In this document: in pieces, positions 18,812 to 63,180 of the stretch
Layout: each line of letters starts with the position of its first letter
How positions within the stretch are numbered: position 1 is the stretch's first letter
Source of the DNA: Bispira polyomma
Taxonomy: Eukaryota
Assembly (NCBI GenBank): GCA_965649765.1
Contig: OZ287750.1
Coordinates: 23,126,001-23,190,000, forward strand
DNA length: 64,000 bases
Direction: 5' to 3'
Notes under the pieces: generated by a model
Database searches by the model: none
What the model saw: the letters and a program-made list of their open reading frames with translations, nothing else
What the model was told of the DNA's origin: nothing
Program-made: the position numbers and the translations under genes

Positions 18812-19330
18812 GTATACCAGAGACAATCAGGTTGGCTTCATACTCCTGTACACCCATCCTACACATACACAGAGAATCATACCTGAGACAGTCAGACTGG
18901 CTTCATACTCCTGCACACCCATTGTACACATACACAGGGAATCATACCTGAGGCAGTCAAACTGGCTTCCTACTCCTGTACACCCATCCTACACATATAC
19001 AGGGAATTATACCGGGGACAGTCAGACTGGCTTCATACTCCTGTACACCAATCCTACACACAGGGAATTATACCTGAAACAGTCAGACTGGCTTCCTACT
19101 CCTGTACACCCATCCTACATATATACAGGGAATTATACCGGAGACAGTCAGACTGGCTCCCTACTCCTGTACACCCATCCTACACATATACAGGGAATTA
19201 TACCTGAGACAGTCAGACTGGCTTCATACTCCTGTACACCCATCCTACACACGTACAGAGAATCATACCTGAGACAGTCAAACTGGCTTCATACTCCTGT
19301 ACACCCATCCTGCACATATACAGGGAATGA
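18812..19330. repeat. 65-bp tandem repeat x8 made of an exon 3' end plus its splice donor
   Basis: Minus-strand donor GT at 19268, 19203, 19138, 19073, 19012, 18947, 18882 and 18817 (period 65, one unit of 61). Confidence 0.95.
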
Positions 19331-19440
19331 TCCTCAACCTGCACATTCTTTACAGTCAGGTTGTACCTCATGGACATCATATACTTGGTGTCATCCACTG
19401 TGTCATTGTTTGCTGCAACGATGTGGGGTTCAGGGTTTTC
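19269..19440 (-). CDS. Two-Ig-domain protein, second half of Ig domain 1 (V/I-set)
   Basis: CTCACCTTAG acceptor, phase 0 to 1; ENPEPHIVAANNDTVDDTKYMMSMRYNLTVKNVQVEDHSLYMCRMGVQEYEASLTVS with LxVxxVxxEDxxxYxC. Confidence 0.9.
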
Positions 19441-20479
19441 CTAAGGTGAGACAAATTATAGTATAAATGGAAATTTTCACTGGGAATTAATTTCTAGCTA
19501 ATGAGTTAAAATAGTGCAAATTAATTCTAGTGAATGTCTTAAAAAATTGTAAATTTTCACTTATACAAAGACTTGCTTACAAGGCTTTACCGTTGGTGAA
19601 ATACTGTATGACTGTATTTTACACAGTCGCCATTCTGTTCAAAAGCTGTCAGCACTGTTTTTTTTAAACTGTCAGCTTCTTCATTTAATCCTAAATGTAA
19701 CCCACAGAGGGATGTGGTGAAAAAATCATAATGCCCTCATGGAAGGACCTTGCACAAGGTCTAACTTATACAGTCCTTCTAAAACAACGATCTATCTTGT
19801 GTTGCCAATTCTTATTGGTTCAAAAGTATTGTAAAATCTAGGACAACACCATATTTGTTATGTATGTCATATACCTCAACTGTTTGTATTTCTATGCTAA
19901 GTTATGTCTGTTACATATAAAACATATAGTATTGCATGAATATACTTCATATTTTTATAAATACAATTTGGAAAAAAAAGAGTAGTTGTAATTTAAATTA
20001 CTATGACATAAAAAATAATGTTTCTTATGTCTTGTTAAGTAGTTTCCCACAGTAAAGCGATATAATTAAAAGTATACCAAGATTTAAGTAACATTTTTAT
20101 AGTTTGTCATGTTTCTACCAGAATAACCTATTTCAAACCACGGATATGCTGGAAATTCAATTTACCACTCTTGGAGTTGTAGAAACACTCAGGCTTCAAC
20201 TTTGTGTTCCTACGTACGCCTCTACTCGTATACTCTGTTTGTCATGAGTTTTCCCTTAAATGACACCTCACATCTTCAGCTGCTTTCATGTCAGTATTTA
20301 CACTCATTCTTAAATGGGACCTGTTGTGTGCTATATTGACCCCCAATACTCTGCCTAAATATAAAAGCGGGAAGATAACCATTGTCAATGTCCCCAAGGT
20401 TATTTAGCCTGCCACTGGGGATAGGAAACAATGCCAGAGGACCATCATTTTAAGGAATGTAAATGTGTGTAGGTTTATA

Positions 20480-28113: not shown

Positions 28114-28224
28114 CTAGGTTTTGCCCATTTTGTCGAAAAATTCTTGTCTAATGTGCTCCCTTTCTTCTGGTGGAGGGAGGTGTGGCTTTATTCCAGCTTT
28201 CTGTCTTTGTTTACTCACTTGGTT
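28114..28224 (-). CDS. CHCHD7: CHCHD7/COX23 coding exon 3
   Basis: TTTTCAG acceptor, phase 0; NQVSKQRQKAGIKPHLPPPEEREHIRQEFFDKMGKT*, resembling the human CHCHD7 C-terminus (QRRKNGVKPFMPTAAERDEI). Confidence 0.9.
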   Translation of the reverse strand, partial: NQVSKQRQKAGIKPHLPPPEEREHIRQEFFDKMGKT

Positions 28225-28244
28225 CTGAAAATATAATGTAAATG

Positions 28245-29003
28245 TTTTTACTTCTATAGGACCAGAATGGATGACCAGGCATCCTCTGTGGCACACATCC
28301 CAATTAGTAAGCAAAAGAATAGTTCAACAGGGAAAAAGGTTTGTGATCAGAGTTCAGCAGACGCAAGTTAGGTGGAAAAGCAAGTTGATACAGATGAACT
28401 TTTTTCCTTAAGACTGTAATCCATATCACGGTGCAAATATAGGGACACTTAGCTGGTGCTGCAACTTTGAAAGAATTTGAACCAGTCAGTTTTATTTTTG
28501 TAAGAAACCAGATAAGAGGTGGAGAGACAATTTCCTCTAGTGAGATTGCTGAGAGGCAACACAGATAATAAATAAACTGGCTGCTACTGCAATGGTTTGA
28601 TTGATTGATTAGGGTTTAACGTCGCTTTCAACACATTGTGTAGGTCATATCATGACGGGGAGATTTTTTTAAACCAGCCAGTCTTTTGGGTAAAAAACCA
28701 GAGGTGGAGAGATGATTTCCTCTAGGGAGATTGCCGAGAGACAACATAGATGATAAGTAGGCTGGCTGCTGCTACACTAGTTTGATTAATTGGGATAAAC
28801 GTCCCTTGCAACGCATTGTATACGTCATATCACGATGGGGAGTTAACTGGTAGGGAAAAGCAGGGCATACTAGTTGGTCAAGATTCTATACTGTAAACCA
28901 CCAGGCTTTCGCAAGTGACTGCCAACTTTCGCAGCTGAGATTAGAACCTACAGCCTCAGAGGTAGAAGGTGAGTGTGTTATCCACTGCACTACTGAGCCG
29001 CCT
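28245..29003 (-). mobile_element. Composite of SINE and L2 3' fragments with an internal duplication
   Basis: On the minus strand: SINE (29003-28785), L2 piece (28775-28670), SINE tail (28660-28600), L2 3' end (28590-28245). Confidence 0.7.
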
Positions 29004-29405
29004 CTGAGAATTCTTTAGGAACCTACAGAAGCAAATTCAGGTTATACATTAAAGAAAAAAAAATTATCTTGTAATTCCAAGACAGCTGTTGATTTGTTTT
29101 GTCAATCGAGGTCAACATGTCTCTACTGCCTGATGGATTCATAAAGAGCTCATACATGATAGATAAAGGGATTTTGTTAATTTTCCTTGAAAAAGATATT
29201 TGGATTTTGTCCTGATCTTCCCCAAAAAATTTGAGATTTTGTACATTAGGATTTTGTCCGTTCACCAAGGAAAACACCCACCCACAACAAAAAGGACCAT
29301 GTTTGACAACCACTTACAGCTGTAGAATAAAAACAATTATGTACTTTTGCAACTTTACTGTCATACTTTTGGCTTCTTTCTACAAGTTTACACCATGGTA
29401 CATAC

Positions 29406-29501
29406 CCAGAATTTGACGCATGATTTGTAGTTTTCAATGTAGAGGTGACACTGTCTTGTATCTTCATTCATAGCTATGCAATCTATTGATTTGTGTGATT
29501 C
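29406..29501 (-). CDS. CHCHD7: CHCHD7/COX23 coding exon 2 (twin CX9C)
   Basis: TTTACAG acceptor and TGG|GTATGT donor, phase 0-0; ESHKSIDCIAMNEDTRQCHLYIENYKSCVKFW gives C-X9-C-X9-C-X9-C when joined to exon 1. Confidence 0.92.
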
Positions 29502-29569
29502 CTGTAAATAAGGTGATTCAAAACATTAGTCTGCCTCGAGTTTTGTGACTAGAAAATACAAACTTCTCT

Positions 29570-31370
29570 GATTGATGACACCCCATTGGGTGGTGTTTTA
29601 CACAACATTGTAGTGTCAGAAAAAGAAGTACTTGACCAGATATTAATGCCTAACTGTAACAAATCATATGGCCCCGATGGTCTTTCACCTAAATTTATAA
29701 AATTAACAAATCGCTCATTGGTAAAGCCGTTAACAAAATTATTCAACCTTTCATTGTCTACGGGGAAAGTTCCTAAGCTGTGGAAACAAGCTAATGTGGT
29801 ACCCTTACGTAAAAAAGACAGCAAAAATGTGTTAGGACACTATCAACCTGTATCTCTTCTCAGTATTTTGGGAAAGATGTTGGAGAGAATAGCTTTTAAA
29901 TACTTATATAATCATTTTAAAGACATTTTTTCACTATCAGTTTGGCAATCAGGGTTTTTGCCAGGTTCTTCAACAATTACCCAATTAATCGAAATATATA
30001 ATACATTTTGCTCAGCGGTATCTCAAAACAAAGAAATACGAGTTGTGTTTCTTGATATTTCTAAAGCCTTCGATCACGTTTGACATTGGGGATTGTTATT
30101 CAAACTGAAGAAATGAGGTATCAGTGGTACATTACTCCAGTTGTTTGAAGATTACCTAAAAGATAGGGTTCAACGAGTGGTTATCAATGGTCAATTTTCA
30201 GACTGGAGCAAAATATTTGCTGGGCTACCACAGGGATCAGTACTAATTTTGTTTTTAGTTTTTATTAATGATATTACAGAAGTTGTAAAAAATTGTAGCT
30301 TAAGACTTTTTGCTGACGATACTTGCCTCTTTATTGAAGTCGACAATCAAATAGATTCAGCAATTAAATTAAATGAGGACCTAAGAAATATTGAAAAATG
30401 GTCTCAGAATTGGCTTGTTACATTCAATCCTTCAAAAACCGAATCAATGATTATTAGCCTCAAACATCACAAAAGTGAAAATCCAAGGTTGTACTTGCAC
30501 AACACACCAATTGTAAATGTGGCTCAACATAAACATGTTGGGCTTTGGCTTGAGGAAAACTTGGGCTGGCATATGCATATACATGAAATCAACACTAAAG
30601 CTGGAAAGCGATTGAACATGCTAAAGCAGTTAAAATATCAAGTCAGCAGAATTACACTGGAAAAAATGTACTTTGCTTTTATTAGACCCATTTTGGAATA
30701 TGGTGATGTTGTTTGGGCTGGGGCTAGCCACTCTGATTTACGCATACTGGGATAAAACTTTGGAATGAACTTGACAACTCACTCAAATATGCAAAAACTC
30801 TCTCTACATTCAAATACATATTACGCAAATGACAATTTAAGGGTAATCAAAAAATAGTTAAGTTTCGTAAAAAAATTGTTTGCTGAAGGTGAACGGTACT
30901 GGAATGCAATTCATGCTAGAATGCGCATGAACTGTAGCCCTCTAAGGGACACCTCACAAAATATTTACATGTCTTGAGCAATTGCACTTGTGACTGTGGC
31001 TTATCTGATAAAAATATTACACATTTCCTATTAGATTGTATAAACTATGCTATACCCAGATAGTTAATGTTAGCTAAGTTATATGATATTCCTGCTGTTA
31101 CAACTGAAACTCTATTAATTGGTAGCCTTTACTTGACATTTGAACAAAACCAGACAATATTTCGAGCAGTTTAAGAATTTTTAAGGGAAACAAATCGGTT
31201 TCATAGTTTTTGATTGCTACAGTGCCCACACACCATCTTATCTTTTTATACATCATTCTGTTATTTTTCTCTTTTGTTTCTTTTGTATATATATCTTCTT
31301 GTGAGAAGGCTTTATAATAATCTTTTTGATTTTGCCTGATTGTTTTGTTCCAATAAAATATTGTTTATGA
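29570..31370 (+). mobile_element. 5'-truncated CR1-group LINE (disrupted reverse transcriptase) with 10-bp TSD
   Basis: GPDG, FLDISKAFD, PQGSVL and FADDT RT motifs with stops; C-terminal CxCG...HFLLDC; AATAAA near the 3' end; TSD AAACTTCTCT at 29560-29569 and 31371-31380. Confidence 0.9.
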
Positions 31371-31951
31371 AAACTTCTCTCTTACAAGCAAATACTAGTT
31401 GTTTGAAAAAATATTTAATTAAGTAGAATTATTGCACAACACTGAAATGTGTGTACAAACTCTGAAATGCTTGTAATGTCACCCTATCCACATCATAACA
31501 ATATTATTTTGGTCTAATTAAACAATTATCTTTTTTTGCATTAAAAATATTATCAAATTTTTGTGGAGGTCCATATCTTGTTTACAGATGCAGTACCACA
31601 ACAAATACCTCTAATTAAGCAGCCGTTATGTCCCTTTTTGTGATACCGTCGTTAAAATAACAGCAAGGCATCTTGCTAAATAGAAACAGATTATTCGGTC
31701 TAAGTACATAGTAAATTACTGTGTCAGATTTAAAACGATCTGCTACAGTAAAGAACTCTGTCCCTCAACACGCGTACATCAGTTAATCAAAGCATTGTTG
31801 AGGATAAAAAACTCGGTCTACCCCTGTCCCTAAATGATAAAAAGGGCTTTTCTGACAATAACGGATTGATTACTATTGCTTGCTTGTCCCATTTGTAAAC
31901 AATAGTCATATATTAGCATATTGGAAATAACAATTTTGTGTATGTGAGTGA

Positions 31952-32076
31952 TACACAGGTGGCGCTGGCTTTGGCCTACCCTTGGCCTCGGCCACTTCAA
32001 TGTTTACATTGACTTTCTTTTGATTTTACTGGGTGGCCTAGGCCAAAGGTAGGCCGAAGTCAGCACCACCTGTGTA
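31952..32076. mobile_element. Short hairpin MITE
   Basis: TACACAGGTGGCGCTGGCTTTGGCCTACCCTTGGCCT ... AGGCCAAAGGTAGGCCGAAGTCAGCACCACCTGTGTA; diverged copy at ~6480-6600. Confidence 0.8.
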
Positions 32077-32265
32077 CAGTAATAAAGTAATTTAATGCAG
32101 ATTAGGTTGCCTGTCATAAATCGGCCACCCCAATATAATAAATGTGTCATAACTTAAATTGATTTTATTTGTCTAAGAAAATACTGTAGTTTATTTGTTG
32201 TCAGTAATTTTTGCTATAAGCATAATTGCTAGGCAAGCAAGAACTGTCAGTGACTGGAATAGCCC

Positions 32266-32502
32266 ACTGCTTGTGGTTATAATTCGGTTGCCTGTCATCA
32301 ATTGGCCGCCATACAATAAATGTGTCACAACTTCAACTTAATTAAATTTATTGGCCTAAATACTGTACTTCCTTGAATATTAGTATTGTAATTGTTTTAC
32401 TTGATTCCTATGGTCCGTTTTATTCCTAGATTGTTAATAATTAACATTTAGAATGTGACGGGCGATTTACAACAGGCGGCCGAATTATAACCGGAGGCAG
32501 TA
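32266..32502. mobile_element. MITE with ~35-bp TIRs
   Basis: ACTGCTTGTGGTTATAATTCGGTTGCCTGT ... ACAGGCGGCCGAATTATAACCGGAGGCAGT. Confidence 0.7.
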
Positions 32503-32527
32503 CCACTGAGCCTGTATAACTGCAACA

Positions 32528-32822
32528 CCACAAAGTCGTTTAAGTTGGAAACTAGACCTGTCCATGCTCACCCGCACCCGTGTCCGCAGCTGTGTATATA
32601 TTCACGGGTGAAAGCTATATAGTTAACCATTTCCACCCGCATCCGTAAAGAAAGCTTCCAAACCCTTTCTCTATGGATACGGACATGAATGACGTAAATC
32701 GATTGTTTTTGCTATATGTGTGGTTAAATGTCTGGTTGTCACCCGTGAATATCTATGCGGGTGCGGACACGGGTGCGGGTGAGCACGGACAGGTCTAGTT
32801 CCCGACTTAGACGGCCCTGTGG
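32528..32822. mobile_element. MITE with ~60-bp TIRs
   Basis: ACTAGACCTGTCCATGCTCACCCGCACCCGTGTCCGCA ... TGCGGACACGGGTGCGGGTGAGCACGGACAGGTCTAGT. Confidence 0.85.
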
Positions 32823-33049
32823 CAGCACCTCAAGCATTGTTTGGACATCTGATTTTAACCTGCACCACACACCTTGCACCTTGTAAATATGATTTTAAAA
32901 AGCACAACGTTAACCACAGAAGATGCACAATTGACGAGATGGATGATGTCCTTTGTCAGCTAAACGCTGTGAATGTAAAGCAGTAGCCGCTTGAAACGCT
33001 TCAGAATACTATATTATCGCCCACAAATTAAATTATCATGCAAGCTCAC

Positions 33050-33166
33050 CTTGACACATGGGTTTCTTATCACATCGTCTTTACGACGCGCTTTACTCAA
33101 CTTTGTAGGAGGTGGTGCAGATTCTTTGCCTTTTGAAATAATACCATTCATGGTTGAATTTGACAT
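33050..33166 (-). CDS. CHCHD7: CHCHD7/COX23 coding exon 1
   Basis: ATG at 33166 with an in-frame stop upstream (alternative ATG at 33151); MSNSTMNGIISKGKESAPPPTKLSKARRKDDVIRNPCVK, then AAG|GTGAGC; NPC motif as in CHCHD7. Confidence 0.88.
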
Positions 33167-34695: not shown

Positions 34696-34743
34696 ATGGT
34701 AATTAAGCTAGGTGGAATGATTTCTAGCAACCCCATTCTATAG
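34696..34743 (+). other. 15-codon uORF in frame with the PR-PLAG start
   Basis: ATG 34696, MVIKLGGMISSNPIL, TAG at 34741-34743, 12 nt before ATG 34756; inside the exon that begins at 34681. Confidence 0.55.
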
Positions 34744-34755
34744 GGACGAGAAACC

Positions 34756-34813
34756 ATGATTCCTTCCTCTCAACCAGATAATCCATTAGAAATCAAGTTT
34801 GATGACAAACTAT
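34756..34813 (+). CDS. PLAG1: PR/SET-domain PLAG-family zinc finger protein, coding exon 1
   Basis: Acceptor ends at 34680; ACCATG, MIPSSQPDNPLEIKFDDKL, then T|GTAAAT in phase 1, forming the W of LWCEEC. Confidence 0.72.
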
Positions 34814-35316
34814 GTAAATATTTTTTGTAGTTTTCTTTTTGTTATACTCAAATTAATTCGCTCCTGTAAACTAAGAATAACATATTATAATTAATGTACC
34901 TATTTTTACATATTTATCGTTCTTATGACTGTTATTTTAACACTTTTTTTAATACTTTAATTATACGTGTATATGTATTAGTTGCAAGTCTTATTATTGT
35001 GCCTGTTTCATTATATCATTAATGTAGTGAATACATCAAGAACAATTTCGCTTGGAAATAGTGTTTTTAAAATTTATATATACATGTATATATATCTTTA
35101 TTCCCCCCATCTACAAAGTTTCTAAGAAACTTATTGACAAGTAGATAGGGTTTGGAAATAAAAAAATAATTTTTACACTTTAAGTTTAGTACTTCAGGCA
35201 TTGTGAATGGAATGTTATTTCGTCCAAGGTTTACCATCTGTTGTTTGTTTTTAGGGAAAAGTAGAAAGAGGGTGAAAAATTGTTCTGTTAATTTTAATAC
35301 CTATTTTAATAAATAG

Positions 35317-35472
35317 GGTGTGAAGAGTGTGGCCAAAGTTTAGAGCAAGAATGTAAAACACATGGTTGCCACAGCATCATACGGGACAAGGCCATTCCAT
35401 CCCGAGCAAAGCTGACCACACCTCATCAGTTAACAGTGAGAAGGCTGGAGCTACGAACAGCTAACAACCATG
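35317..35472 (+). CDS. PLAG1: PR-PLAG coding exon 2 (PR zinc knuckle)
   Basis: WCEECGQSLEQECKTHG...IRDKAIPSRAKLTTP (PRDM knuckle CxxC-x7-CxxHG and SRAxxxxP); donor G|GTTTAG is weak but phase-compatible. Confidence 0.85.
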
Positions 35473-35715
35473 GTTTAGATTCTTCTAATACTGTAACAAT
35501 AGAACCTCCTATTATCCGATCATGCTGGGAGAGAGCAAAATTTTGTTCGGATAATAGAAGGTCCAATAAACTGTAAGAGGTATTTTAGTGTAAAATAATA
35601 GGAAAACATGAATTTCGGAGAGTAAAAATGTGTTCTCATAAAATTGAATATTTATATAACAGAAGTTCAGATAATAGATGTTCTACTTTCTAGCATATAA
35701 CATTCTTGCATGACA

Positions 35716-35932
35716 TGGTGGTGTAGTGGTAACATACTCTCCTACCACATCTACAGTTGTGGGTTCGAATCTCAGCCCAGGCATATGTGTGGGAAATTTG
35801 GTAGTCGTCTTGCTGAAGGCTTGGTGGTTTGAAAAAAAGCTAGACCTGCCATGTTTTACTTCTCTCAAACAGTGAACTGGCTGTCATGATATGACTCAAG
35901 ACATGTTCAAGTTGATGTTTAATTCAAAACTA
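35716..35932 (+). mobile_element. tRNA-derived SINE
   Basis: TGGTGTAGTGG A box, GGTTCGAATC B box, GATATGAC...GTTTAA tail. Confidence 0.75.
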
Positions 35933-35939
35933 AAGTAAC

Positions 35940-37158
35940 ATGACGAGTTGTTCGGTTTTTGTCTATATCTGACTCGGTTCTTCAATGGATTGAATCCTAT
36001 CTTGAATGCCGTGATCAAATCATCAGGGTCAACGGAGTTGAGTCATCTCTTTTTAATCTCCCTTTCGGTCTCCCTCAAGGTTCTGTTCTAGGGCCCCTTC
36101 TGTTCTCACTGTACACTACTCCCCTCGCAAGTATAATATCCTCACACCACAATATTAGCTATCACTTCTGTGCAGATGACACACAGATCTACTGCTCCCT
36201 CACTCCCAAAAATTGTTGTCAGATCCTGGAACAGCTTTCTAGCTGCCTGTCTTCGATTGAATCTTGGATAAATAATTCAAAATTGAAACTCAACCCTGAC
36301 AAAACAGAATTCCTACTTATTGGCTCCAAACATCAGAGGGAAAAGGTTCTTGACTTCTTCCCTGCTACTCTCCTTGGTAACAGCACTGTTCCTGCTGACA
36401 GTGCGAAGAACCTAGGAGTTACTTTTGACTCTGACTTCTCCTTCAAAAAACATGTCTCGAATATCTGTCGTTCCTGCTACGGCAACATCCGTGACTTCCG
36501 CAGGATTCGATGACATTTAACCCAAGAAAATGCCATTGCAGTGGCAAATGCCCTGGTATCAAGTCGACTAGATTACTGTAACTCACTACTATATGGAATT
36601 GGAAAGGGCCAATGAAACAAACTACAGAAAATACAAAATAACCTGTGCAGAATAGTAAGCCATGCTGGCCCTTGCACTAACACTACTTCCCTGCTGAAAC
36701 AATTACATTGGTTACCTATTGAGTTTTGCATTAAATTCAAGGTAATTGTCCTCATTTTTAAGACAGTCTATGTACATCAGCCTGCCTATTTATCATCTAT
36801 GTTGTCTCTCAGCAATCTCACCAGAGGCAATCGTCTCTCCACCTCTGGTTTCCTACCAAAAAAACAAGCTGGTTCAAAATCATTCTTAGTTGCAGCACCT
36901 GCTGAGTGGAATAGCTTCCCTACCAGTCTTCGGACTGAGACAAGCATCATGGGTTTTAGAAAAAGGCTCAAAACACATTTGTATCAGCTCGCTTTTCCAC
37001 CTTAGCATGCCATATGAGGGTCACGACTGAATCTCCGATCACGAACCTTTTCTGTCTACCGGACTATGCTCTTGCACACTGACTAGGATATGAGCCACAG
37101 AGGATGCCTGGTCATCGATTGTGGCGCTATAGAAGTAAAAACATTAACATTAACATTA
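35940..37158 (+). mobile_element. 5'-truncated L2-clade LINE (RT C-terminal part, with stops)
   Basis: PQGSVLGPLLFSLY, CADDTQIY, LKLNPDKTE, SRLDYCNSLLYG, LHWLPI; (AACATT)n tail. Confidence 0.9.
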
Positions 37159-37582
37159 TATAGCTATGTGGACACATTTATCTAAAACGATAATGCACAC
37201 CGGCTGTTGTTACTAAGACTTCCTGTATGTAAACAAACATTACAATGTTTTATAAATGTTCTGTGTTATGATTATTTTCAACACTCTAATTGAAACTTAT
37301 GCAGTCATGTTAGAATTGAGATAAATTAACCTACTCAATCCCAGTTTTATAATACTGGTCGGGTCATATTACTCATTGCATTACTCATTGCATTACAGAA
37401 CTTACAGACAGAAATTAATATTGAAAGGACATGCTACTTTATGCCTCTGAATTAAAGTACAGAATAATGTGACTCGAACACTATTATGACTGCCGTGTAA
37501 TGTTGTAACCATTTTGAAGCATTGGTAGCACAAAGTTAAAACTAGTTCTACTAACAAAGAGCACTTAACCTCTTGTTTTTAG

Positions 37583-37695
37583 TGTATGGTACTTTTGCAA
37601 AGAAAATCATACAGAAACGGACGAGATTTGGACCATTTGAAGGCGGTCATACAGAACAGTGGAATCACCAGCGAGAAGATAGACTTACTCTTAAG
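37583..37695 (+). CDS. PLAG1: PR-PLAG coding exon 3 (PR/SET)
   Basis: VYGTFAKKIIQKRTRFGPFEG...LTLK|GTATTG; PRDM10/15-like KRTxFGPxEG. Confidence 0.92.
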
Positions 37696-37734
37696 GTATT
37701 GTATTGTAGATGTTTAATGTGCTTTATTGATGGT

Positions 37735-38015
37735 AGGTACCTTCCAAAGCGCAACATTGACAGCACCTGCTGAGTGAAATAGTCTCCCTACTAGTCTTCG
37801 CAATGATACAAGGATTACAGGCTTCAGGAAAAAGCTCAAAACACATTTGTATAAACTCGCTTTTCTGCCTTAACTTTTATCTCCTGGTCACGACTGAACT
37901 CTGGTCACGGACCTTTTTCCCTGTTTTTTACGACTATTCCTTTGCTTAATGAATTGGATGTGCACTGCAGCTAGAGGATGCCTGGCCATCGATTGTGTAA
38001 AAATATTAACATTGA
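37735..38015 (+). mobile_element. L2 3' fragment
   Basis: Matches 36893-37150. Confidence 0.8.
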
Positions 38016-38774
38016 TAAACTATTAATCATGATCCTAATACATCGCCAATTTTGTCACCAGTAGATTTATTTAAACATATTTTTTTGTTTGGTGATAATA
38101 GTATGTATTAAAAAAAAAATTCCATAATAGACAGTACATGTATTTTTTATAAAAGAAAATAAAGTCTGAGAGCATGTACCTTTTTTGGTGATTAAAAGAC
38201 GGGATCGCCGTTGAATATAATGGAGATATATGCCATTCTTTGCGATACAGAAGAGCCCCTATCATTTTGGTGGTCGTACTGATGATGACTTCCTTCTGTC
38301 AATCAGTAATGATTGTTGGTTCTGGTTGTGGGTTTTTTTGCCCTTTAGAATTTGTTACAACATAAAATAAGTGCTAAAAAGGTCTGATATAATTATAATA
38401 ATATTATTCAAACACCTTGGGAGACTGATAATCTGTGTGGTTAATTGTATGTTCATAAAAAAGACGAGGCACTTCACTATAACGCCACAGGAAAATAAGA
38501 ATTTGAAACTAAGTTCAGAAAATTGAATATTCGGATAATAGAGGTGCATGTAATATACTGTAAAGCCTAAAATATCCTTTTCTGTTTGTATTGTATTTTG
38601 CATTTTTAACACATTTTATTGATAAGAGGCACCATCTAAAACGCAACAGCAGAATCAATTTACCAATCGAGAAGTCAAATTAAAATATTTTTTTGCACCT
38701 CCTGTCATCTGAACAAGATCTTGCTATTTCAGTTAGTTCGGATAGTAGAGGTTCTTGCTATGATCCATTTGTAG

Positions 38775-38927
38775 CTGTTTGCGGGTGGGGGCGAGGATTC
38801 CTACTTGGACTGTGCAGATGAGAACAGCTGTAACTGGATGATATTCGTGAGGCCGGCAAACAAACCTGAACATCAGAACATGGTGGCCTTCCAGTATCGA
38901 GGACAGATCTACTTTGTCTCCACTAAG
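38775..38927 (+). CDS. PLAG1: PR-PLAG coding exon 4 (PR/SET)
   Basis: LFAGGGEDSYLDCADENSCNWMIFVRPANKPEHQNMVAFQYRGQIYFVSTK; AG/GT, phase 0-0. Confidence 0.95.
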
Positions 38928-40628
38928 GTAGGTGTCATTGGGTGTTTTTGCAAATCTCCACTATTGCAAATATCCAGGGCACGTATTCTCCAAAAAAACT
39001 ACTGTATTTGGAAGAGGCTATTTAGAAGTTCCTGTTCACCTAAATTAACCTTGACTTTTCTGACTATTCATTTATAAGAGCTTTTATTGCTGAATTTAAA
39101 TATATACAGTCAAGTTTTACACAGCCTCACTCTAGCCAGAGTTATGGGCACCTCAGATTTTAACTTAAGTTTGACTTAAGGCTTTAGTAACATAAACACA
39201 AAAAACGATCCCGATAACCACGTTGTGTGTGCTTGAGCTTCTCAGAAACTGCACAAATTTTCCTTGGTGGCCTTAAACTTGATTTATAGATAACATATTT
39301 ACATTTTCATGGGTGGAAATGATAAAGAATGACATATATTTTAATTATATACTAATTCATATATTTTCGTATCATTTTAAGTGGTATCTTGAGACATAAA
39401 TACATATAGCAGTGTGTAATATTGTAACTAAAATGGGTAATATTTTTAAAGTACATGCTTTACAAACGTGACACAATTCATTTTCCAAGGAGGGATCAAT
39501 ACTGAAGTATTGTACATGACTAGAAAAAGGAAAACATCAGCAATATTTTGAATGAATTCGTTTTTTAAAAAAAGTACAAAAACGGGGATAATTTTAGAAA
39601 AACTTCAAAGTTACATTCTTCTAAATAGAAAGATATTTTGTATTCTTTGTTTATGTAACATAATAAGGCATATTTAAAAATGTAATTCATTCAAAACAAT
39701 ATACACATGTTTTAAAGTTGTGTAGTCTATATAATATCCTTATATATGCTGGATCAATACTTGTATTGTGTCAAAACAGAAAGGGCTCTCTGCGAGAAAT
39801 GTTTACAAATATGACGTTCTATGCAGAGTTTGAAACTGTGTGACGTCACAATACAAGAATCCTCGTATGGGTGTTTTTATGGTTTTTTAGCAAAGTATTG
39901 AAGTTTTAAATTGTCTGCACATATAAAAATAGTTAAAAACATATCTAAAGTGTCCTTTTAAAGCCATCATAGTTGTGATACAGAGTAGAAATGGCCATTC
40001 GTAAAGCATTATACTTTATCGCGACGTGTTTTTGTGTTTACGTTACTAACGCCTTAAACAAGAGATCTTTGGCCACTGGGGCAGTATTCACAAAATAGCC
40101 ATGACTTTGTCTTAGATCTAGTATACTTTTGTGCTAGGTTCAGGACAATGTCTAGACTAAGCCCTTTTGTGGATACCATCCCTGGGCCCGTATTCACGAA
40201 AGGACTCGGCCAAGTCTTAGGCTTTACTATAGTTATTAACAAAAATACCTCTTCTTTTGTATATGAACATTCTATTATTTAAACATATTCATTGTCACTC
40301 CCCCTAAAGTGTTCTAATAAGAGATACTGTACTGTGCATCTATGTATCTTATTTATTATAGTGGCATGCAACATACTTTACATTAATACGTACAATACAA
40401 AATAGCAAAACCAATCTTACCCAGCCTTTTGGTGGGCTTATATGTTGCAATTGTGTTTGACTAGTTAGTGTTTCTTAATAAATCCCTTTTGTTTATTCCA
40501 AGTACTTTCTACATATATTGTGAGTTCTTTTGGACAATACTGCATTAGTTTATAAATATCAAAGTCATGAAACCCTGGAAAAGTTTACTCATTTTATCGT
40601 ACTGTACAACTCTCTGTATTCACTGTAG

Positions 40629-40770
40629 GCTGTTGCCCCAGAGGAAGAGCTGAGGATCTGGTATGCCAAAGACTACGCAACACAGATGGGTGTGGATCTC
40701 CTGACGAGCTACGAAACTCCATCACCTCCCTCTCCCCCGTCACCATTCACAGCGAGTAACCTGCGTATAG
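40629..40770 (+). CDS. PLAG1: PR-PLAG coding exon 5 (end of PR/SET)
   Basis: AVAPEEELRIWYAKDYATQMG...; ELxxWY motif; phase 0-1. Confidence 0.92.
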
Positions 40771-41455
40771 GTAGGGGTCAGCATAACAAAAGTTGGAAGC
40801 TGCACATTACCTGACTTTTTACACATTGTCAAATAAACTTTTATAAATTTGGGCCCAAAGTCCCATACTCCTGTGAGTCGGCGGGTGATAGCGCTAATCG
40901 TCACAGCCTTACTCCTATTTGACCATATAAGGAAATTATTGTTCTTGTATTAGTGTATCATTAATTATTAATTTGATGCCGTCATTAGTGTTTAAAAACA
41001 TCTGTGTGAAAATGTTGATGTGCATCCAGACCCTTAATTGTGCATACAGACAAGCAAATTTCAAACCAAAACAAGTCAACATTTTCTAGGTAAAATAATA
41101 CAGAAAAAAATATAAGTACAAGATAAATATAGGTAAAGTAAAATATAGAGCAATGTTTCTTGTGCCATTGTTACAAGATTATACATTGTCTTAGCATTTA
41201 TTGGCAAAAAAATGTTTAAGAAATTCAGTGTAACCTCTATTTTTCTCAATTTCTGTTATCCAAATATTCGATTTTTTATGAATTCATTAAATACTTGGCA
41301 TTTTATTCACAGATTATCACTCTGCCAGTCTGTTCAGGTAATAGAGGTTCTACTATAATTGTATAATGTAATAAATTTATTTTCTGGCCAAGGTAAGTAA
41401 TTTAATGTAAACTTTGTTAAAATGATACCCCTGGAATTATTGTCTCTTTTTTTAG

Positions 41456-42944
41456 ATGAAGAGTTTTTAAAGCCCCCTACAAAAAAGAACAATAGATTGA
41501 GTGCAGAAAAAGGGAGGAAATATGTGATGGCCACAACTGAAGTTGCCGCAAAAGATGAACAAAGTGAAAACCTCATAACTTTAGCCAACATTGCCTTGGA
41601 TCCACCATCTTCAACCAGTTATACAGACCTGCAAACTGTGCAGTTCCCTTCTGTTAGTACCCCAGTACCTCTAGGTATTTTGTCTGTTCACCAAGGTGGT
41701 AGTCCCATGTCTGTACCACTAGTTACTACAGCTGCAGGAATCACACAGGTAGCATCAGGTAGTCAAGGTACGCTATCTCTACCACAAGGTATCACTTCTG
41801 TAGTGCCAACAGTAGCTCAAGTTTTACCATCATTACCTTCAGATAATGTGTCAGTAAACACACAAGTACCACAAGATTCTCAGTCTCTTTACACAACTTC
41901 AGTACCAGCTGGAAGTGTAGTGGTACCCCAAGCTACTGCATCACTGAACTCATTAGTACCACAAAGTACAACATCTCTACTGCAGATAGCTGTTTCAGTG
42001 CATCCAACCTCATTACCAACAGGTACTTTTTTACCGACACAAGGTACTCTGTCTGTGCCGCAAGGTACCTTTGCAGTACCATCAGACCATACTGCGGCTG
42101 TATATCAATCTGCAGCAATACAGAGTGCCAAGATAGACGATGCAGGAATTTTGACCATTGAAGAAAGCGCCATTGCTTCAGCTCCGACAACGTTAAACGT
42201 TGAAATATTGACTGATGAGGGAGGGGGGCCTATGATAAATCAGGTGCAGCTAAAGACTGCAATGAAAGACTCTTGGGAAAAAGGTGACATGATGGATAGT
42301 GAAAATGTTGAACTGACCATAGATGAATCTGATACCATTATTTTGACTTTAGACAGTGAGCCAGGTGCAGATCATGGGCTCAGTGATATAGATGATGCAG
42401 AAGTGGATGAATACATTGATACATCATCTGAAACTTGTAGTTATTGTGGGCAAAGCTTCCCGGCTCAAATCTATTCTAATCACGACTGTCCACGACAGAA
42501 GAAAGTGGGTCTGCGGAAAAGGAATATCACTAACAGGAGAATTGGCAAGGCTAAAGTGGATAATAAGCCCAAGAGAACTGCGAAACTCAAGTATGGACAA
42601 GCCAGAAAGCGCAGGGGATCGCTCACAATGGCAGTGAATAAGATGACAACAAAAAAAAGTTCAAAGAATGGAGGTAATGGTGAGGTTAACAGTCTGAATG
42701 AAGCAGATATTGTAGAGGCTTCTTCTGAAGGTGCTATTATTAACAATGACAATATGGTCCAAAGGGAAACCCAGAAATACCAGGACATCAGAAAGATCAA
42801 GGGCAGTAGGAAAAGGAAGTCGGGAGTCGTCAGAAAGAAGATACCACCTCCGTACTTTGAGTGTGACAGGTGTGAGATGATATTTAGTAGTCTAGACAAA
42901 CTACAAACCCACTTTTACTCCCACACAGGGGAAAAACCTTTTCT
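41456..42944 (+). CDS. PLAG1: PR-PLAG coding exon 6 (S/T/P/V-rich linker, basic clusters, zinc finger 1)
   Basis: Within the 508-aa ORF; TTTTTAG acceptor in phase 1; ends FECDRCEMIFSSLDKLQTHFYSHTGEKPF, CT|GTAAGT. Confidence 0.93.
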
Positions 42945-44974
42945 GTAAGTACTTCTGTGTTTTACTATGCATAGTCGATTTAACATGTAACGGTAGAACT
43001 TTGATTATCTAAGTACCTTGGGTCAGTGGTTCTGATATAAGGAATTGTTCATAAAATATAAGAGACATTGTACAATAAAAACAATAGGTAGGTGTACATT
43101 TTGGAAATTAAATAAATACATTCGAACATTCCTGTTATCAGAAATGGCACATAAAATAAAAAGTTTTAACAAGTGAATGACAGTTTGTCATATGTAGGAA
43201 AAACTACATTTAAAAATATTTAACAACTAGCCAACGTGACGTCCCTATCTGATAATAGAGGTTCGGATAATAGAGGTTCTACTGTATTTTCAATGGGTTA
43301 CTGTTTGTCAAAAATGTAAAGTTGAATGCCAGAGTATCTCTTTTCATTATTCACCCAGTTCTGTTGGTTGATTTGTTTGTCACTAGAATTACACACACAA
43401 AAACACAATTTTTTCATGACATTTGGTAGAAGAATGGGGCATAGGCCAAAGAACAATTCTTTAAATTTATGCAATGGATCTTGACAGAAGGACAGATTCT
43501 TATCTTATGACTAGGCTCTGTGGCCTTAGCATCTGTGATATAAAGGTGTGTACAGAGCTAATCTCAGAGGTGGATGGCATCTGTGCTATCTTTTTTGGTT
43601 CGAATATTGTGGCTGTATAGATGTCCCACAATGACTTTTATTCTGATACTGAGGTCAAGGTCTATTGAGATATTGACCTTTTTCCTTGTTGCCACCATAA
43701 AAATTAATGGACATCTATTTAAATTTTGATTTCATTGAACTTACAACATACAGCCAATTTGACCTCATTTTCAACGTGCAAGGTCAGCCATCTTGAATTT
43801 TGCATCTTTTTAAAAACTTTCTGTAGACTCCAAATAGAGTGATTTAAACCTCATTTTCGATTGGCAGGGTGTATTTTACGATATACGGCAACTTTTCCAA
43901 AATTTTACAATTGAGTGGGCCATCTTGAATTTCTCTGGAAAACAGTGTCTTAAGCTTTCTTTCGACGGGAATGTATTGCACACATTGAATTTCTGTGTCA
44001 TTATCGTCAAACAGCCTTTAGGGAAACTGCGCAGAATAATGCAACTTCTCAGATATCTTCAGGTTTAGGCGACCATCTTCTTCTGTTCGTTTGCATTGCC
44101 ATCTGGACATTTAAATTTTATACTTGCTGCAATAACCTTTTGTTCAACTCATCATATTGGTTTCTCGGGGAAGCATTGTTTTTTTCTTACAAAAGCGATT
44201 CTTTAGATTTAAAAAGCGTATTAACTGGTAAAACATTATATATTGTGCAGTTTTAAATGCTTGCTGAACAGAAAAAAATTAATCCATACAAAACACTAAT
44301 TCATACCAAAGTTACATAAAGTTTTAACAATGCCTTTTAAATACAATAAACACCGTAGCATTTCAATAATTAGCTTGATATTCCTGTTGCATAGATACAG
44401 GGAAGCTTTAGAATAATCAATCGAATAATACAACTGTTGTTTGTAGGCTCGGTTGTTCTATGGAACCCATGTAGTCAATAGGAGAACACTTAAACCTTAA
44501 TCTCTTTACATTTAATGGCATTGTATAAGTTTAAGGTGAGCAGCTAAGTGAGTAATGTGTAACTAATGAAGTAATCAGGTTATAAGTCGCAAACTATTAT
44601 TACTGGTAAGTTGATGTTTTGGTCTCATAAGTTGTGCAGTTTCTTTTTAAAATGCCACAACTTGTTCTATTTCCATAAAAGTACTGTCTACCAATTGGGT
44701 CATTTGGCCATGTGGCCCCCATAGGCCACTCCATTCTGTTCTTCTTGTCACTGTTGTGCCTTGTCTGAGCGCAGTCTAAGTTTCACAAGGTGTCAAAACT
44801 GCTGTTGGAAATTTGATTAAAAGAAATATAGTAAATTGAGTACATTTTGTGTGTTTAGTAAGATAATCTAAATTTCAAAACTGTACAGTTTTTGCTTCCT
44901 ATATAAATACTGCTCTAAGTATATCTCACATATATAGAATATTTATTTCCCAACTTGTTGTGTGGTTATAATAG

Positions 44975-45075
44975 GTGTCCCCATGAGGGTTGTGGAAAGT
45001 GCTTTGTGACTAAGTTTAAGTTGAAGCGGCATGTTACAACACATGGAGAAGGAGAAGTGTTTAGCTGTGCTTACT
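44975..45075 (+). CDS. PLAG1: PR-PLAG coding exon 7 (zinc finger 2 and start of finger 3)
   Basis: CPHEGCGKCFVTKFKLKRHVTTHGEGEVFSCAY; CX4C finger like PLAG1 F2 (CIQQDCTKAFVSKYKLQRH); phase 2-1 fits both neighbouring exons; absent from the ORF track. Confidence 0.92.
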
Positions 45076-45445
45076 GTGAGTAGAAGAACATGTACTATTG
45101 CTTCTGTAACATTTTTTCCTTGGCATTCAACCATTAAAAAAATCTATTTTTACATAAGATTGAAACTTATCTTCAAATTGTGATGTTTTGTTTACTGACG
45201 TTAGTATCATGAACGTATTATCATTGATAGTTTTACTCATTACATACAGATCACAATAAACTGAAAGTTTGAGTTAAAGTTGGTCAATACTGGATATAGT
45301 TCCTAATTTGCTAAACTGCTTACGTTTTATTACAGACCTTAAATTGAAAAATTTAACATCAACAGAATTTTTAATTAGTTAGACATTTGTTTAAAAGAAA
45401 CTCACTGCCTTGTTATATATACTAAAGTTAGTTTTTGAATTTCAG

Positions 45446-47154
45446 GTGATAAAACCTTTCGCAGGAAGGACCATTTGAAGAATCATCTGAAAGTACATGA
45501 TCCAAACAAGGACTTATACACCTGCGATATTTGCTTTAAGGAGTATGCATCTGTGTTTGCCTTTAAGACACACATGGCATTTCACAAGGCAGAGCAAGGA
45601 GAACTCCTGTGTTACGTGTGTTCCCAGGTGTTACCGAATAAAGAAGAACTCCTTCACCACTTGAAAGTCCATTCTGGGGCCAGATCAGTGAAAGACCCCG
45701 ATGCGAAGAAACACGCCTGTAGGTTTTGCGATAAAACATTCTACACAGCCAAGGATGTGCGGAGACATGCAGTTGTCCACACCAAGCAGAGAGAACACAT
45801 GTGCCACCTCTGTCCACGGAGATTCGGAAGGAAAGATCACTTGGTGAGACATATTCGTCTGGCCCATGGCAAAGATGTGCAAGATTCACTAAACATGGAA
45901 ATTCATGCCATAATGCCCCCGGTTATGAAAGTGACGAAGGAAAGCAAGAAGCAAGTGAAGAAGAAACAAAGAAACGTCAGTACAAAGAAGAAGCGGAACT
46001 CAGCCTCTACAGAAAATGGAGAGACTGGAGAAAGTTATAACCCTCCATCATTGGCCTCACTACAGAGTCAGCCAACTATAATACTACCACAAACCAAACT
46101 GGACAACTTGAACTACCAGCCTGAAACAGAGGAAGCAAACACAGACTATGTACTGGTTGAACCCAAAGCACAAGCCAGCTTTTTGCAGAGTCAACCTAAT
46201 TTCACGACCTCGCAGCAACAAGAAGCTCCCATACTGCAGCCAATAGCTAGAGTTCCAAATCTTACAACCCAGCCAACCGACCAGAACTTCATGGAGTTAC
46301 AGTTTATCATTGCTCAGAACTCCATGAACCTGCCCAAGACACAGCAGGTGGTACACCAGATGGCAGAGCAGACACTCGAACAAACTCAGACCATTGTTCA
46401 ACAAACAATTATATCAAAGAGCAAGACACAAAGAAAACCAAGGAAACAAAAGACGAAGGTAAAAGTCAGTACTACTCAGGGAAGTCTACAAGAGCCGCAA
46501 GCTATTCAGCAGGAAGCCACTCAGCCAGTCAGCATGCAACCATCAAGTTCGATAACTTTACCAAATGTCCAAAATATCTTCGAGAATCAGCCACAATTAT
46601 CAGCTCTTATAGGTGGCAGCAGCTTCAATTTGGATAACCTTAGCTTTTCAGGATTAACTTCTTTTAAGCCAAAGATACCATCTAAACAGACACAGGTTCA
46701 AGGTCATATTATCAGTAGAAACAGTGAAAGCCAGGTTAGTTTGAATACAAACCAAGACCAATTGACTAATGTATCGGGGCCAGTGTTTCCGGAATCTGCC
46801 ACAGCTATAAACAGTCAGCAACCGGCAAATATCTTAGAAGGGTCAAATATGCCACTGATATTCTCTATTAATCCAAGTAATATGGGAATGGCTGAGCAAC
46901 TTCAGTTTTATCAGTTTATTGCACCGGCAGACCCAGCCACCAACCAAACCGATCAGATCACAGAGAAGTCAAGTACTTTGGTGGTCAGTCAGCAGCAACA
47001 GGTAAACCAGACTCAACCGGTTGTTTCTGGTTACTCTGCACCAGTTCAAGTAACTAATGCTCAGTTTGAAGGGAATTTTCCACATAGTCTTGTTTCTCAT
47101 GATTCAGAAGCAGTCAGGCTATTTTTCCCAGACGAGCAAAACCCTGTTTTGTGA
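45446..47154 (+). CDS. PLAG1: PR-PLAG last exon (fingers 3-7 and Q/S/T/P-rich C-terminus)
   Basis: RKDHLKNHLKVHDPNK, FYTAKDVRRHAVVHT and RFGRKDHLVRH are PLAG1/PLAGL2 signatures; stop at 47152-47154; AATAAA at 47511. Confidence 0.95.
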
Positions 47155-60450: not shown

Positions 60451-61129
60451 GTGAGTTTACAGAAAGTAATATAAGGGGTACACCAAATGGTTTAGAATCA
60501 ATTACCTATGATCCTTTGAAAATTAGAAAGTTAATCAGGGTACACCACATGCTTCACAATCAATTACCCATAAATTGCTTGAAAATTAAACACAATTTAA
60601 TTAATAAGTAACCTTGATCCAAGGGTGGAGGTGATTGATATGATGATTATGATTTACTGTATCATATATTTTATCATACATAACAGTGACAATAACTACC
60701 CTTCTAGAGAACGCTGTATTTGTGTGAACATTTCACCCACCCATTTGATGGGTGAATATGTAGGGTAAACACTACATATTGTCTCTTGACTAACCTTGTT
60801 TACTTGTGACAGATATATTGTCCCTCGGGTGAATAATACGGGAGTTTGACCTATCAGTGTTCACTCGTACTTGTGTCCCTTGTCAGTGTAATATTCACTG
60901 AAGGTAGCCATACAGTTAACTACACATATAGCAAACGCAATCGAAATACGACATTACCCTCCATGTCCGTAAAAGAAGCTTTTCAGACCCATCTTTTAAG
61001 GGTAAGGACGGTAATAATGTAAATCCATTGTGTTTGCTATATGTATAGATTACCTTCCATAAATATTTAGACTGATAAGAACACGGGTACGGGTGAACAC
61101 TGAAGGTGAAGTTCCCACTTAATCCTTGC

Positions 61130-61338
61130 ATAGGTTTGTCACTAGTCAAGTATATTAGTTTGTCACTAGTCAAGTATATAGGTTTGTCACTAGTCAAGTA
61201 TATAGGTTTGTCACTAGTCAAGTATATTAGTTTGTCACTAGTCAAGTATATAGGTTTGTCACTAGTCAAGTATATAGGTTTGTCACTAGTCAAGTATATT
61301 AGTTTGTCACTAGTCAAGTATATAGGTTTGTCACTAGT
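61130..61338. repeat. 24-bp minisatellite x~9 with a 72-bp higher-order pattern
   Basis: Unit GTTTGTCACTAGTCAAGTATAT(AG/TA); variant order A-B-A-A-B-A-A-B-A. Confidence 0.95.
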
Positions 61339-63180
61339 ACGCAAGTCTTTCTGTGTCACGAGATTGATATCAAAGGCAAAGTCCCCCATTTCTGATTTTT
61401 AACCAGACCTTTGCGCATGCGCAAGGGTTGGTTTTCCCTGTCAAAGTTCTAGGATCTTGGGTAGGAACAAGTAAATCTCAGAACTGGTGGTGAGCTATGG
61501 TCTGAAATTCGCGTCGATTGTAGATATGGGCTTATTGTGCTCTGAGATTTTTTCGGGATCGATTGTCACAAAGGAAATATTTTATTTTTACTTTTTTTTG
61601 ATTTTTTAGCAAGGTTTACCATTAAAGTCGATTGGATTTGGCGCCTCGCTTTCGCCTCAAAATATTGTAGTTTATAGCTGTACTTTATTTGTAAATTTCT
61701 GTAACATTTTACTTGGTCAAGCTCTGTTTATAAATAGTAGTAAACAATAATTCAATATGGCTCCCGACTTAATTTATCTTAGGCGAGGCGGGATTGGCTA
61801 AAAGTCAGGGCATCTTCAATGCGCATGCGTAAATGCGCAAGTGTGTGCGCTGTAGGTGACCTATAAAAGGGGATTTCCCAGCAATAACCACGACTTTATG
61901 ACGGCTAGCAAAAACAATATACTTATTTGATCACGTTTTGTAAGAAAAGTTGGGATATGACAGCCTTTAGAGACAATGGCTGAATACGTAACAGTGCTTT
62001 CATATGGTTTATAAAAGGATATGATGGCCTTTCATTTGTGTTGCATCAATGGCAAATTATATGCTTTGATTATTTGGTTGTGTCTCGTACATTCGCAAGT
62101 TTTAACCATTTCTTTATGGGCTTATTTGACATTGAAAAAGATCGTTTTTGGCGAAAATTGGAGCTGTATTTTAATCTAGAGTTGTTAATATATTATTTTG
62201 TAATGTAAGAGATATAAAACGCATTTAGTTATTGAAGAAAATGGCAAATATTGAATTTACAAGACCCTCGAATCAACAATACCAAACTATATGCTTTGAT
62301 TTATTTGGTAAGTTTGTTTGTTTGATTGGTCCGTTATTTGATTCGATTATACATGGATGGGGGAGGGGGGGGGGACAACGATTCGTGGTGGATAGCATTT
62401 CGCCATTAATAGGATTAATACACCTAATCACTGTCGAAAATAAATTCCATTGAAAGGAAATTATATGCAGAATATAATACATAGATCGTTTTTGGAATCC
62501 ATTTCGACCGCCAACTAGTGACTGGGTCACTATTTTCGGAATCGACAGCAAACATCTGGTACGATTAATGCTTAGGTTAGTTGCACCTTAGAATTTGTTG
62601 TATAAAGATTAAGCGCTATAAAAGTACGATTAGATTAGATTAGAAATCGGGACATACCAAGAGACTGGAATATTTTTCAAAACGAAAAATCTGCCTAAAT
62701 GAAACAGGAAGGGAGAACCGCTAACTGTTTACAAATAAGAATACAAGTTAGAATGGACTTAAAATGTATTGTCATTACTCTACTTTTCTATTCATAAAAT
62801 CAAAAGTATATGGACATGTGATGCAGGAAGATATGTATACAACGAGTGATTTACAATGGCGACTACATCTGGGGCTTTTGTCTAGTTTCGCTAATTCATG
62901 TGCTTTCCTAATTACAAAAGTCTGTTAACTGCTTTTAATTTCATCTATTTTTGCTACTTCACATGCTTTCCTAATGAGTCGTACTAACAATGTTTGTTGT
63001 CGAGATCGGCAGTTTCTTTTGCACATGTGCATTGCTGTGAAATTTTATCAGGGAACTGTAGTTTTCATAGTACTCGCTAGACGTCGGTACACTGCAGAAA
63101 TAAGAAAGAAAGATGTTGGAAGGTAAACAACTGTACAAAAAAATTAAGAAAATAGTGGATTTTATTTATTACACCCTTAA

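What the first reader, a model, noticed from the sequence alone, without database searches (positions are those of the whole stretch)
34756..47154. PLAG orthologue with an N-terminal PR/SET domain: a PRDM-PLAG protein
Seen in sequence: eight exons splice in consistent phase (58+156+113+153+142+1489+101+1709 = 3921 nt, 1306 aa). They join a zinc knuckle and PRDM10/15-like PR domain to exactly seven fingers collinear with PLAG1 F1-F7, including the CX4C second finger, HDPNK linker, KDVRRH and RKDHL. Established: vertebrate PLAG1, PLAGL1 and PLAGL2 have no PR domain and start just before finger 1; PLAG1 has several non-coding 5' exons. Inference: PLAG may be a PRDM subfamily that lost its PR domain in vertebrates, and the non-coding 5' exons of PLAG1 could be relics. 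Automated annotation would probably label this gene PRDM10-like or split it.
Basis: partly seen in the sequence, partly recalled or inferred. Interest (0 to 1): 0.85.

Follow-up and report, generated by a model that had tools for sequence, protein, structure and literature searches.

The report
PLAG genes carry an ancestral PR domain
This invertebrate (probably annelid) gene joins a PRDM-type PR/SET domain to the seven DNA-binding fingers of the PLAG growth and tumour genes; crustaceans, some insects and even bird PLAGL1 are built the same way, so the human PLAG proteins look like truncated members of an overlooked PRDM subfamily.

Summary
The eight-exon model is real: all introns GT-AG, 1306 aa, no stop. 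It encodes a zinc knuckle, a PRDM10/15-type PR domain, a C2HC finger and seven PLAG fingers. Orthology to PLAG rests on a finger tree (98/97 with vertebrate PLAGL1/PLAGL2-type arrays), identical base-contacting residues in fingers 3, 6 and 7, and CHCHD7 lying head-to-head as at human PLAG1 (lead from an earlier scan note on this stretch, tested here). The genome has separate PRDM10- and PRDM4-type genes. PR plus PLAG fingers recurs in 24 database proteins (crustaceans, hemimetabolous insects) and four unnamed loci with the same exons. So PR is most likely ancestral to bilaterian PLAG and was lost repeatedly (human PLAG1 and PLAGL1; apparently beetles, copepods), not once in vertebrates. It probably works as a PLAG-specificity transcription factor with a non-catalytic PR scaffold. 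No paper found describes this. Not shown: transcripts from this species, monophyly of these PR domains, or relic exons in mammals.

The parts
34756..34813 (+). Exon 1 coding part (ATG; 19 aa, ends in phase 1 in the Trp codon before the knuckle); an acceptor near 34680 suggests an upstream non-coding exon
   Evidence: sequence; N-terminus resembles locust PR-PLAG start
35317..35472 (+). Exon 2: PR zinc knuckle (CxxC-x7-C-x-x-H) and pre-PR segment with the ELR motif shared with bird PLAGL1
   Evidence: 156 nt also in L002, L003, L026, L052 and in this genome's PRDM10
37583..37695 (+). Exon 3: PR domain N-part (113 nt)
   Evidence: PF21549 14-43; 113 nt in L002, L003, L026, L044, L052
38775..38927 (+). 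Exon 4: PR domain core (NWM..QN.VAFQ)
   Evidence: PF21549 52-100 E 1.6e-16; PDB best PRDM10 8e-10, PRDM4 3e-9
40629..40770 (+). Exon 5: PR domain C-end (LRIWY) and Pro/Ser linker
   Evidence: PF21549 102-122
41456..42944 (+). Exon 6: long Ser/Thr/Val-rich and acidic linker, C2HC finger (aa ~535), basic stretch, PLAG finger 1
   Evidence: 38% identical over 499 aa in relative L001
44975..45075 (+). Exon 7: PLAG finger 2 (CX4C)
   Evidence: 82% identical exon in L001
45446..47154 (+). Exon 8: PLAG fingers 3-7 and Gln/Ser-rich C-terminal region, stop
33050..33166 (-). CHCHD7 exon 1 (ATG at 33166, 1590 bp from the PR-PLAG ATG, head-to-head)
29406..29501 (-). CHCHD7 exon 2 (twin CX9C)
   Evidence: matches human CHCHD7 2LQT residues 20-51, E 0.077
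28114..28224 (-). CHCHD7 exon 3
   Evidence: only PDB hit is 2LQT residues 52-77, E 0.18, abutting the exon-2 match

Best explanation
The locus is this animal's single PLAG orthologue and keeps the ancestral bilaterian form of the gene: zinc knuckle + PRDM10/15-type PR domain + C2HC finger + seven PLAG fingers + Gln/Ser-rich tail, transcribed head-to-head with CHCHD7. It most likely works as a sequence-specific transcription factor: fingers 6-7 read the PLAG core and finger 3 the G-cluster (inferred from identical contact residues), the C-terminal low-complexity region activates (inferred by analogy with PLAG1), and the knuckle-PR module serves as a protein-binding scaffold rather than a methyltransferase (inferred: two of the three PRDM9 catalytic tyrosines are Phe). 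PR was kept in this lineage, malacostracans, polyneopteran insects and bird PLAGL1, and lost several times (human PLAG1 and PLAGL1; apparently beetles, moths, copepods, a millipede). Shown: gene model in DNA, domain identity, orthology, recurrence, purifying selection in birds. Inferred: splicing in this species, ancestry and number of losses, biochemical roles.
For: Gene model. Finger tree: window with hoatzin PLAGL1, a PLAGL2-like array and all invertebrate PLAG arrays, 98/97, apart from PRDM10/1/9 arrays. Contact residues of F3/F6/F7 identical in window, bird, shrimp, locust, beetle; these are the DNA-binding fingers of PLAG1 (PMC12317869). CHCHD7 head-to-head here and in L044, as at human PLAG1 (PMC9405559). 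Single copy; separate PRDM10- and PRDM4-type genes in the genome. 24 of 207 fetched PLAG-type proteins carry PR; one lies as an unbroken 826-aa ORF on a 3.8-kb contig while the shrimp gene spans 14.7 kb. Hoatzin PLAGL1 (last-exon ORF identical to XP_009934383.1) has six in-frame exons from knuckle to stop; PR exons 3-4 differ from godwit by 6 synonymous and 0 non-synonymous changes while introns are 77-89% identical. Window PR is 47% identical to the bird's against 40% to its own PRDM10.
Against: PR trees put PLAG-linked PR domains with PRDM10 (85-92/90-95) but do not resolve them as one clade (AU p 0.29-0.49, neither shown nor rejected). The closest relative L001 shows no PR exon in the 6.85 kb before its exon 6. 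Many PR-less database proteins may be truncated models, so the count of losses is soft. No named invertebrate deuterostome or cnidarian was examined. No human PRDM15 sequence was available for comparison.
Confidence: 0.86

Rival explanations
1. PR domains were attached to PR-less PLAG genes independently in annelid-like animals, arthropods and birds by exon shuffling from PRDM10/15.
For: PR monophyly not resolved against PRDM10; the first three intron positions and the 156- and 113-nt exons are shared with PRDM10 itself; many lineages lack PR.
Against: Bird and window PR share a motif and identity above that to PRDM10; they share the intron after the PR core, which this genome's PRDM10 has 8 codons later; the C2HC finger and CHCHD7 linkage go with the PR exons; three or more identical gains are less parsimonious.
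Confidence: 0.06
2. The PR exons and the finger exons are two neighbouring genes, or the main product is a PR-less isoform from an internal promoter.
For: No reads for this species; L001 lacks PR exons close to exon 6; PR-less isoforms are common among PRDM genes (own knowledge).
Against: Exon 5 read-through stops after 15 codons and exon 6 has a clean acceptor in matching phase; unbroken PR+finger ORF on contig L036; same exon chain in five other genomes. A minor PR-less isoform remains possible.
Confidence: 0.04
3. Same gene, but the PR domain is an active lysine methyltransferase.
For: PR strongly conserved in birds; the Y357-equivalent is kept and the bird and L003 keep Tyr at the Y276-equivalent; loss of single residues need not abolish activity (PMC5519329).
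Against: Window has Phe at the Y276- and Y341-equivalents; the Y341-equivalent is not Tyr in any PLAG-linked PR aligned.
Confidence: 0.15
4. The gene is the PRDM10/15 orthologue with PLAG-like fingers by convergence.
For: PR type and exon sizes match PRDM10.
Against: A separate PRDM10-type gene exists on contig C5; fingers group with PLAG 98/97; no collinear match between PLAG and PRDM10 or PRDM4 arrays; CHCHD7 synteny.
Confidence: 0.01

Closest known systems
Vertebrate PLAG family (PLAG1, PLAGL1/ZAC1, PLAGL2)
   Same: Seven collinear C2H2 fingers with CX4C finger 2, identical contact residues in F3/F6/F7, low-complexity C-terminus, CHCHD7 head-to-head (PLAG1).
   Different: About 670 aa N-terminal to finger 1 with knuckle, PR and C2HC; human PLAG1 codes only from exons 4-5 (PMC12317869) and human PLAGL1 from its last two exons (PMC5619815). 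Introns lie between F1/F2 and in F3 here, inside F2 in the bird. The C-terminal LPxF motif of many PLAGs is absent here.
PRDM10/15 subfamily (with PRDM4 as next relative)
   Same: Zinc knuckle + PR of the same type, first three intron positions and phases, a single finger after PR, probable loss of catalytic tyrosines.
   Different: Different finger array (no collinear match); fourth PR intron 8 codons apart; the genome holds its own PRDM10-type gene; not among the 14 subfamilies of Vervoort et al. (PMC4760075, no mention of PLAG).
FOG1/2 (ZFPM) as late-recognised PRDM factors
   Same: A known transcription-factor family recognised afterwards as carrying a PR domain (title of PMC7761934).
   Different: FOG keeps PR in mammals; PLAG lost it in the human paralogues, which would explain why it was missed.

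Membership tests
PLAG family | Seven C2H2 fingers collinear with PLAG F1-F7 | tested here: met
   Seven fingers; F2-F7 on the diagonal of position-specific profiles, F1 weak; tree 98/97 with vertebrate arrays on F3-F7
PLAG family | DNA-contact residues of fingers 3, 6, 7 | tested here: met
   RDHN, TKDR, RDHR in window, hoatzin, shrimp, locust, beetle
PLAG family | Microsynteny with CHCHD7 (PLAG1) | tested here: met
   also L044
PLAG family | Binding to the bipartite PLAG motif; C-terminal transactivation | not testable with these tools
   Needs binding and reporter assays
PRDM family | N-terminal PR/SET domain | tested here: met
   PF21549 across exons 3-5; PDB hits are all PRDM PR domains
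PRDM family | PR and C2H2 fingers in one polypeptide | tested here: inconclusive
   In-frame model and unbroken ORF in a crustacean contig, but no reads from this species
PRDM10/15 subfamily | PR domain grouping with PRDM10/15 | tested here: met
   Groups with this genome's PRDM10, 85-92/90-95, apart from PRDM4/9/1/2; support is below the starred threshold
PRDM10/15 subfamily | PRDM10/15-type finger array and one-to-one orthology | tested here: not met
   Separate orthologue on C5; arrays not collinear and apart in the tree
Catalytically active PR domains (PRDM9 type) | Tyr276, Tyr341, Tyr357 | tested here: not met
   Phe, Phe, Tyr in the window (residues from PMC5519329)

The most novel reading that the evidence does not exclude
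PLAG is an unrecognised bilaterian PRDM subfamily, sister to PRDM10/15; birds still make a full-length PR-PLAGL1, and the human oncogene PLAG1 and the imprinted PLAGL1/ZAC1 are genetically fixed PR-minus forms, with traces of the old coding sequence left in mammalian 5' UTR exons (the human penultimate PLAGL1 exon is ~475 bp, PMC5619815; the hoatzin one is 497 nt and wholly coding).
Probability: 0.6. Interest if true: 0.85.

Novelty: new variant of a known kind. Interest (0 to 1): 0.78.

Why it matters
It joins two families treated as unrelated, adds a subfamily missing from the two PRDM surveys read here, and shows that PLAG and PRDM10 labels in invertebrate and bird annotations are partly wrong. 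PLAG1 and PLAGL1 control growth, are rearranged or amplified in tumours and PLAGL1 is imprinted; if they are PR-minus derivatives, the PR-plus/PR-minus contrast known from PRDM2, PRDM3 and PRDM16 (own knowledge) can be tested directly with chicken PLAGL1, and the time of PR loss can be set against the origin of imprinting at the locus.

Tried and rejected
Locus L050 from the metagenome scan looked like mammalian PLAG1 and could be human; it was dropped after the first motif scan and not compared. The idea that the PLAG array derives collinearly from PRDM10 or PRDM4 fingers failed. ESM Atlas gave only generic PRDM or zinc-finger clusters. A PR-region search returned only five insect proteins. 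POFUT1 is not nearby; the CHCH family scan missed the split CHCHD7 gene. Viral scan blank. The tree had a mis-spliced row and was replaced. Ten paper searches found no description of a PR domain in PLAG; the library lacks most subscription journals and the supplements of PMC4760075 were not held.
Full report
Observation. Exons 3, 4 and 5, searched separately, cover consecutive parts of the Pfam PR profile, and exon 4 is nearest to human PRDM10 and PRDM4 in the PDB. The gene is single-copy in a 1.03-Gb assembly. The mitochondrial contig has the blocks atp6-R-H-nad5-F and cox1-cox2...Y-cox3, which I recall as annelid; the host is therefore probably an annelid (inference).

It is a PLAG orthologue. 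The best relatives of fingers 3-7 are proteins that NCBI names PLAG1-like or PLAGL1-like. Position-specific profiles from 46 non-redundant PLAG arrays score window fingers 2-7 best on their own position; finger 1 is weak. A tree of fingers 3-7 joins the window, all invertebrate PLAG arrays, hoatzin PLAGL1 and a PLAGL2-like array at 98/97, apart from PRDM10, PRDM1, PRDM9 and generic arrays (bootstrap not fully settled). Helix positions -1, 2, 3, 6 of fingers 3, 6 and 7 are identical from window to bird; these are the fingers that bind the PLAG1 site (PMC12317869). An earlier scan note on this stretch pointed to CHCHD7; I found three exons on the minus strand, whose second and third match residues 20-51 and 52-77 of human CHCHD7 (weak singly, but abutting, and the only hit for exon 3). 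Its ATG is 1590 bp from the PR-side ATG. Human PLAG1 and CHCHD7 are head-to-head 500 bp apart (PMC9405559). A second invertebrate locus, L044, has the same arrangement.

It is not PRDM10/15 itself. The genome has a separate PRDM10-type gene on C5 and a PRDM4-type gene on C1, assigned by PDB similarity and by finger motifs I recall. The PLAG array does not map collinearly on either. The knuckle-PR module, however, is PRDM10-like: it groups with that gene at 85-92/90-95 and shares the 156- and 113-nt exons and their phases. Whether PLAG arose by duplication of a PRDM10/15-like gene or by an early fusion is open.

The architecture is widespread. PR plus PLAG fingers occurs in Penaeus, Procambarus, Palaemon, Petrolisthes, Oratosquilla, Halocaridina, Hirondellea, Schistocerca, Anabrus, Timema and Zootermopsis; 24 of 207 fetched PLAG-type proteins have a PR hit. 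One lies as an unbroken 826-aa ORF on a 3.8-kb contig, whereas the shrimp gene spans 14.7 kb, so it is probably a spliced mRNA. Unnamed genomic loci L002, L003, L026 and L044 have the same four exons before PLAG fingers. UniRef calls two of the arthropod proteins PRDM10. Tribolium and a millipede have single-exon PLAG genes with another gene ending 2.3 and 4.3 kb upstream and no PR exon in 10 kb; copepod, beetle and moth proteins lack PR, though some models may be truncated.

A vertebrate keeps it. Locus L052, host DNA in a metagenome, has a last-exon ORF identical to hoatzin PLAGL1 XP_009934383.1. Upstream lie exons of 156, 113, 150, 120 and 497 nt, all AG/GT-bounded and in frame to the stop, encoding knuckle, PR, the C2HC finger and fingers 1-2. 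This PR region is 47% identical to the window's, more than either is to the window genome's PRDM10 (40-41%), and shares a distinctive motif in the knuckle exon. Godwit has the two PR exons that are not in assembly gaps, with 6 synonymous and 0 non-synonymous differences over about 260 sites while neighbouring introns are 77-89% identical; these are coding exons, not relics. Human PLAG1 codes only from exons 4-5 and human PLAGL1 from its last two exons behind a complex 5' UTR (PMC5619815). The human penultimate PLAGL1 exon is about 475 bp against 497 nt, wholly coding, in hoatzin; its untranslated 5' part is a candidate relic (inference, not tested; no human sequence was used).

Mechanism. Most likely a PLAG-specificity transcription factor whose Gln/Ser-rich tail activates and whose knuckle-PR module recruits partners. 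The positions of PRDM9 Y276 and Y341 are Phe in the window and Y341 is not Tyr in any PLAG-linked PR aligned; Y357 is kept. That argues against PRDM9-like catalysis without excluding another activity.

Limits. The joined protein was not searched in any database. Monophyly of PLAG-linked PR domains is neither shown nor rejected (AU p 0.29-0.49). The closest relative, L001, has no PR exon in 6.85 kb before its exon 6, which may be a long intron or a loss. No named amphioxus, echinoderm, fish or cnidarian locus was seen; L055 and L056 look deuterostome-like but are too short. One possibly human contig (L050) was set aside.

Novelty. The proteins sit in databases under PLAG or PRDM10 names, but the two PRDM surveys read (PMC4760075, PMC2082429) never mention PLAG and ten searches found no paper on a PR domain in PLAG, in a library that lacks most subscription journals. 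I class it as a new variant of known kinds: an overlooked PRDM subfamily that includes the PLAG genes. Interest 0.78.

Noticed in passing
L052:326-11278 (hoatzin) and L075:68216-77206 (godwit): Bird PLAGL1 has conserved, in-frame knuckle and PR exons that the older NCBI models (387 aa, last exon only) omit.
   Followed up: yes
L075 / P0394: The godwit 831-aa model is a chimera of a radial spoke protein 3 gene, two PR exons and the PLAGL1 last exon; a RhoGAP gene lies further upstream.
   Followed up: partly
window 28114-33166 (-): CHCHD7 head-to-head with the gene; also in L044.
   Followed up: yes
L001:1-6850: Closest relative (81% identical fingers) shows no PR exon within 6.85 kb before the exon-6 equivalent; long intron or loss.
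   Followed up: partly
G000:C14 27.13, 27.56, 27.80 Mb (L022): Three copies of a PR exon with a TGA stop; the one examined is closely related to the PRDM4-type gene on C1 (100/99), probably duplicated fragments.
   Followed up: partly
G000:C75: 15.5-kb mitochondrial genome with annelid-like gene blocks but genes on both strands (cox1, cox2, cox3, nad3 opposite to the rest).
   Followed up: partly
window 35959-36513 and 29553-30755: Decayed LINE-type reverse transcriptase fragments in intron 2 of the gene and in a CHCHD7 intron (recognised by eye from the translation).
   Followed up: no
window 34697-34744: Short out-of-frame upstream ORF just before the main ATG, after a good acceptor near 34680.
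   Followed up: no
L028, L039, L037: Beetle, millipede and scorpion PLAG genes are single-exon ORFs without PR exons in 10 kb upstream; retroposition or internal-promoter capture could explain PR loss.
   Followed up: partly
L055, L056: Short marine contigs with vertebrate-like PLAG fingers; L056 has the C2HC finger and no intron inside finger 2, possibly an invertebrate deuterostome.
   Followed up: partly
P0357 (Cephus cinctus): Sawfly protein with a knuckle-PR module that falls near insect PR-PLAG in one tree (long branch) but carries a different 12-finger array.
   Followed up: no
L050: Contig resembling mammalian PLAG1, possibly human; set aside and not compared.
   Followed up: no
window 18801-19466 and 60916-61389: ORFs made of tandem repeats, probably non-coding satellites.
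   Followed up: no
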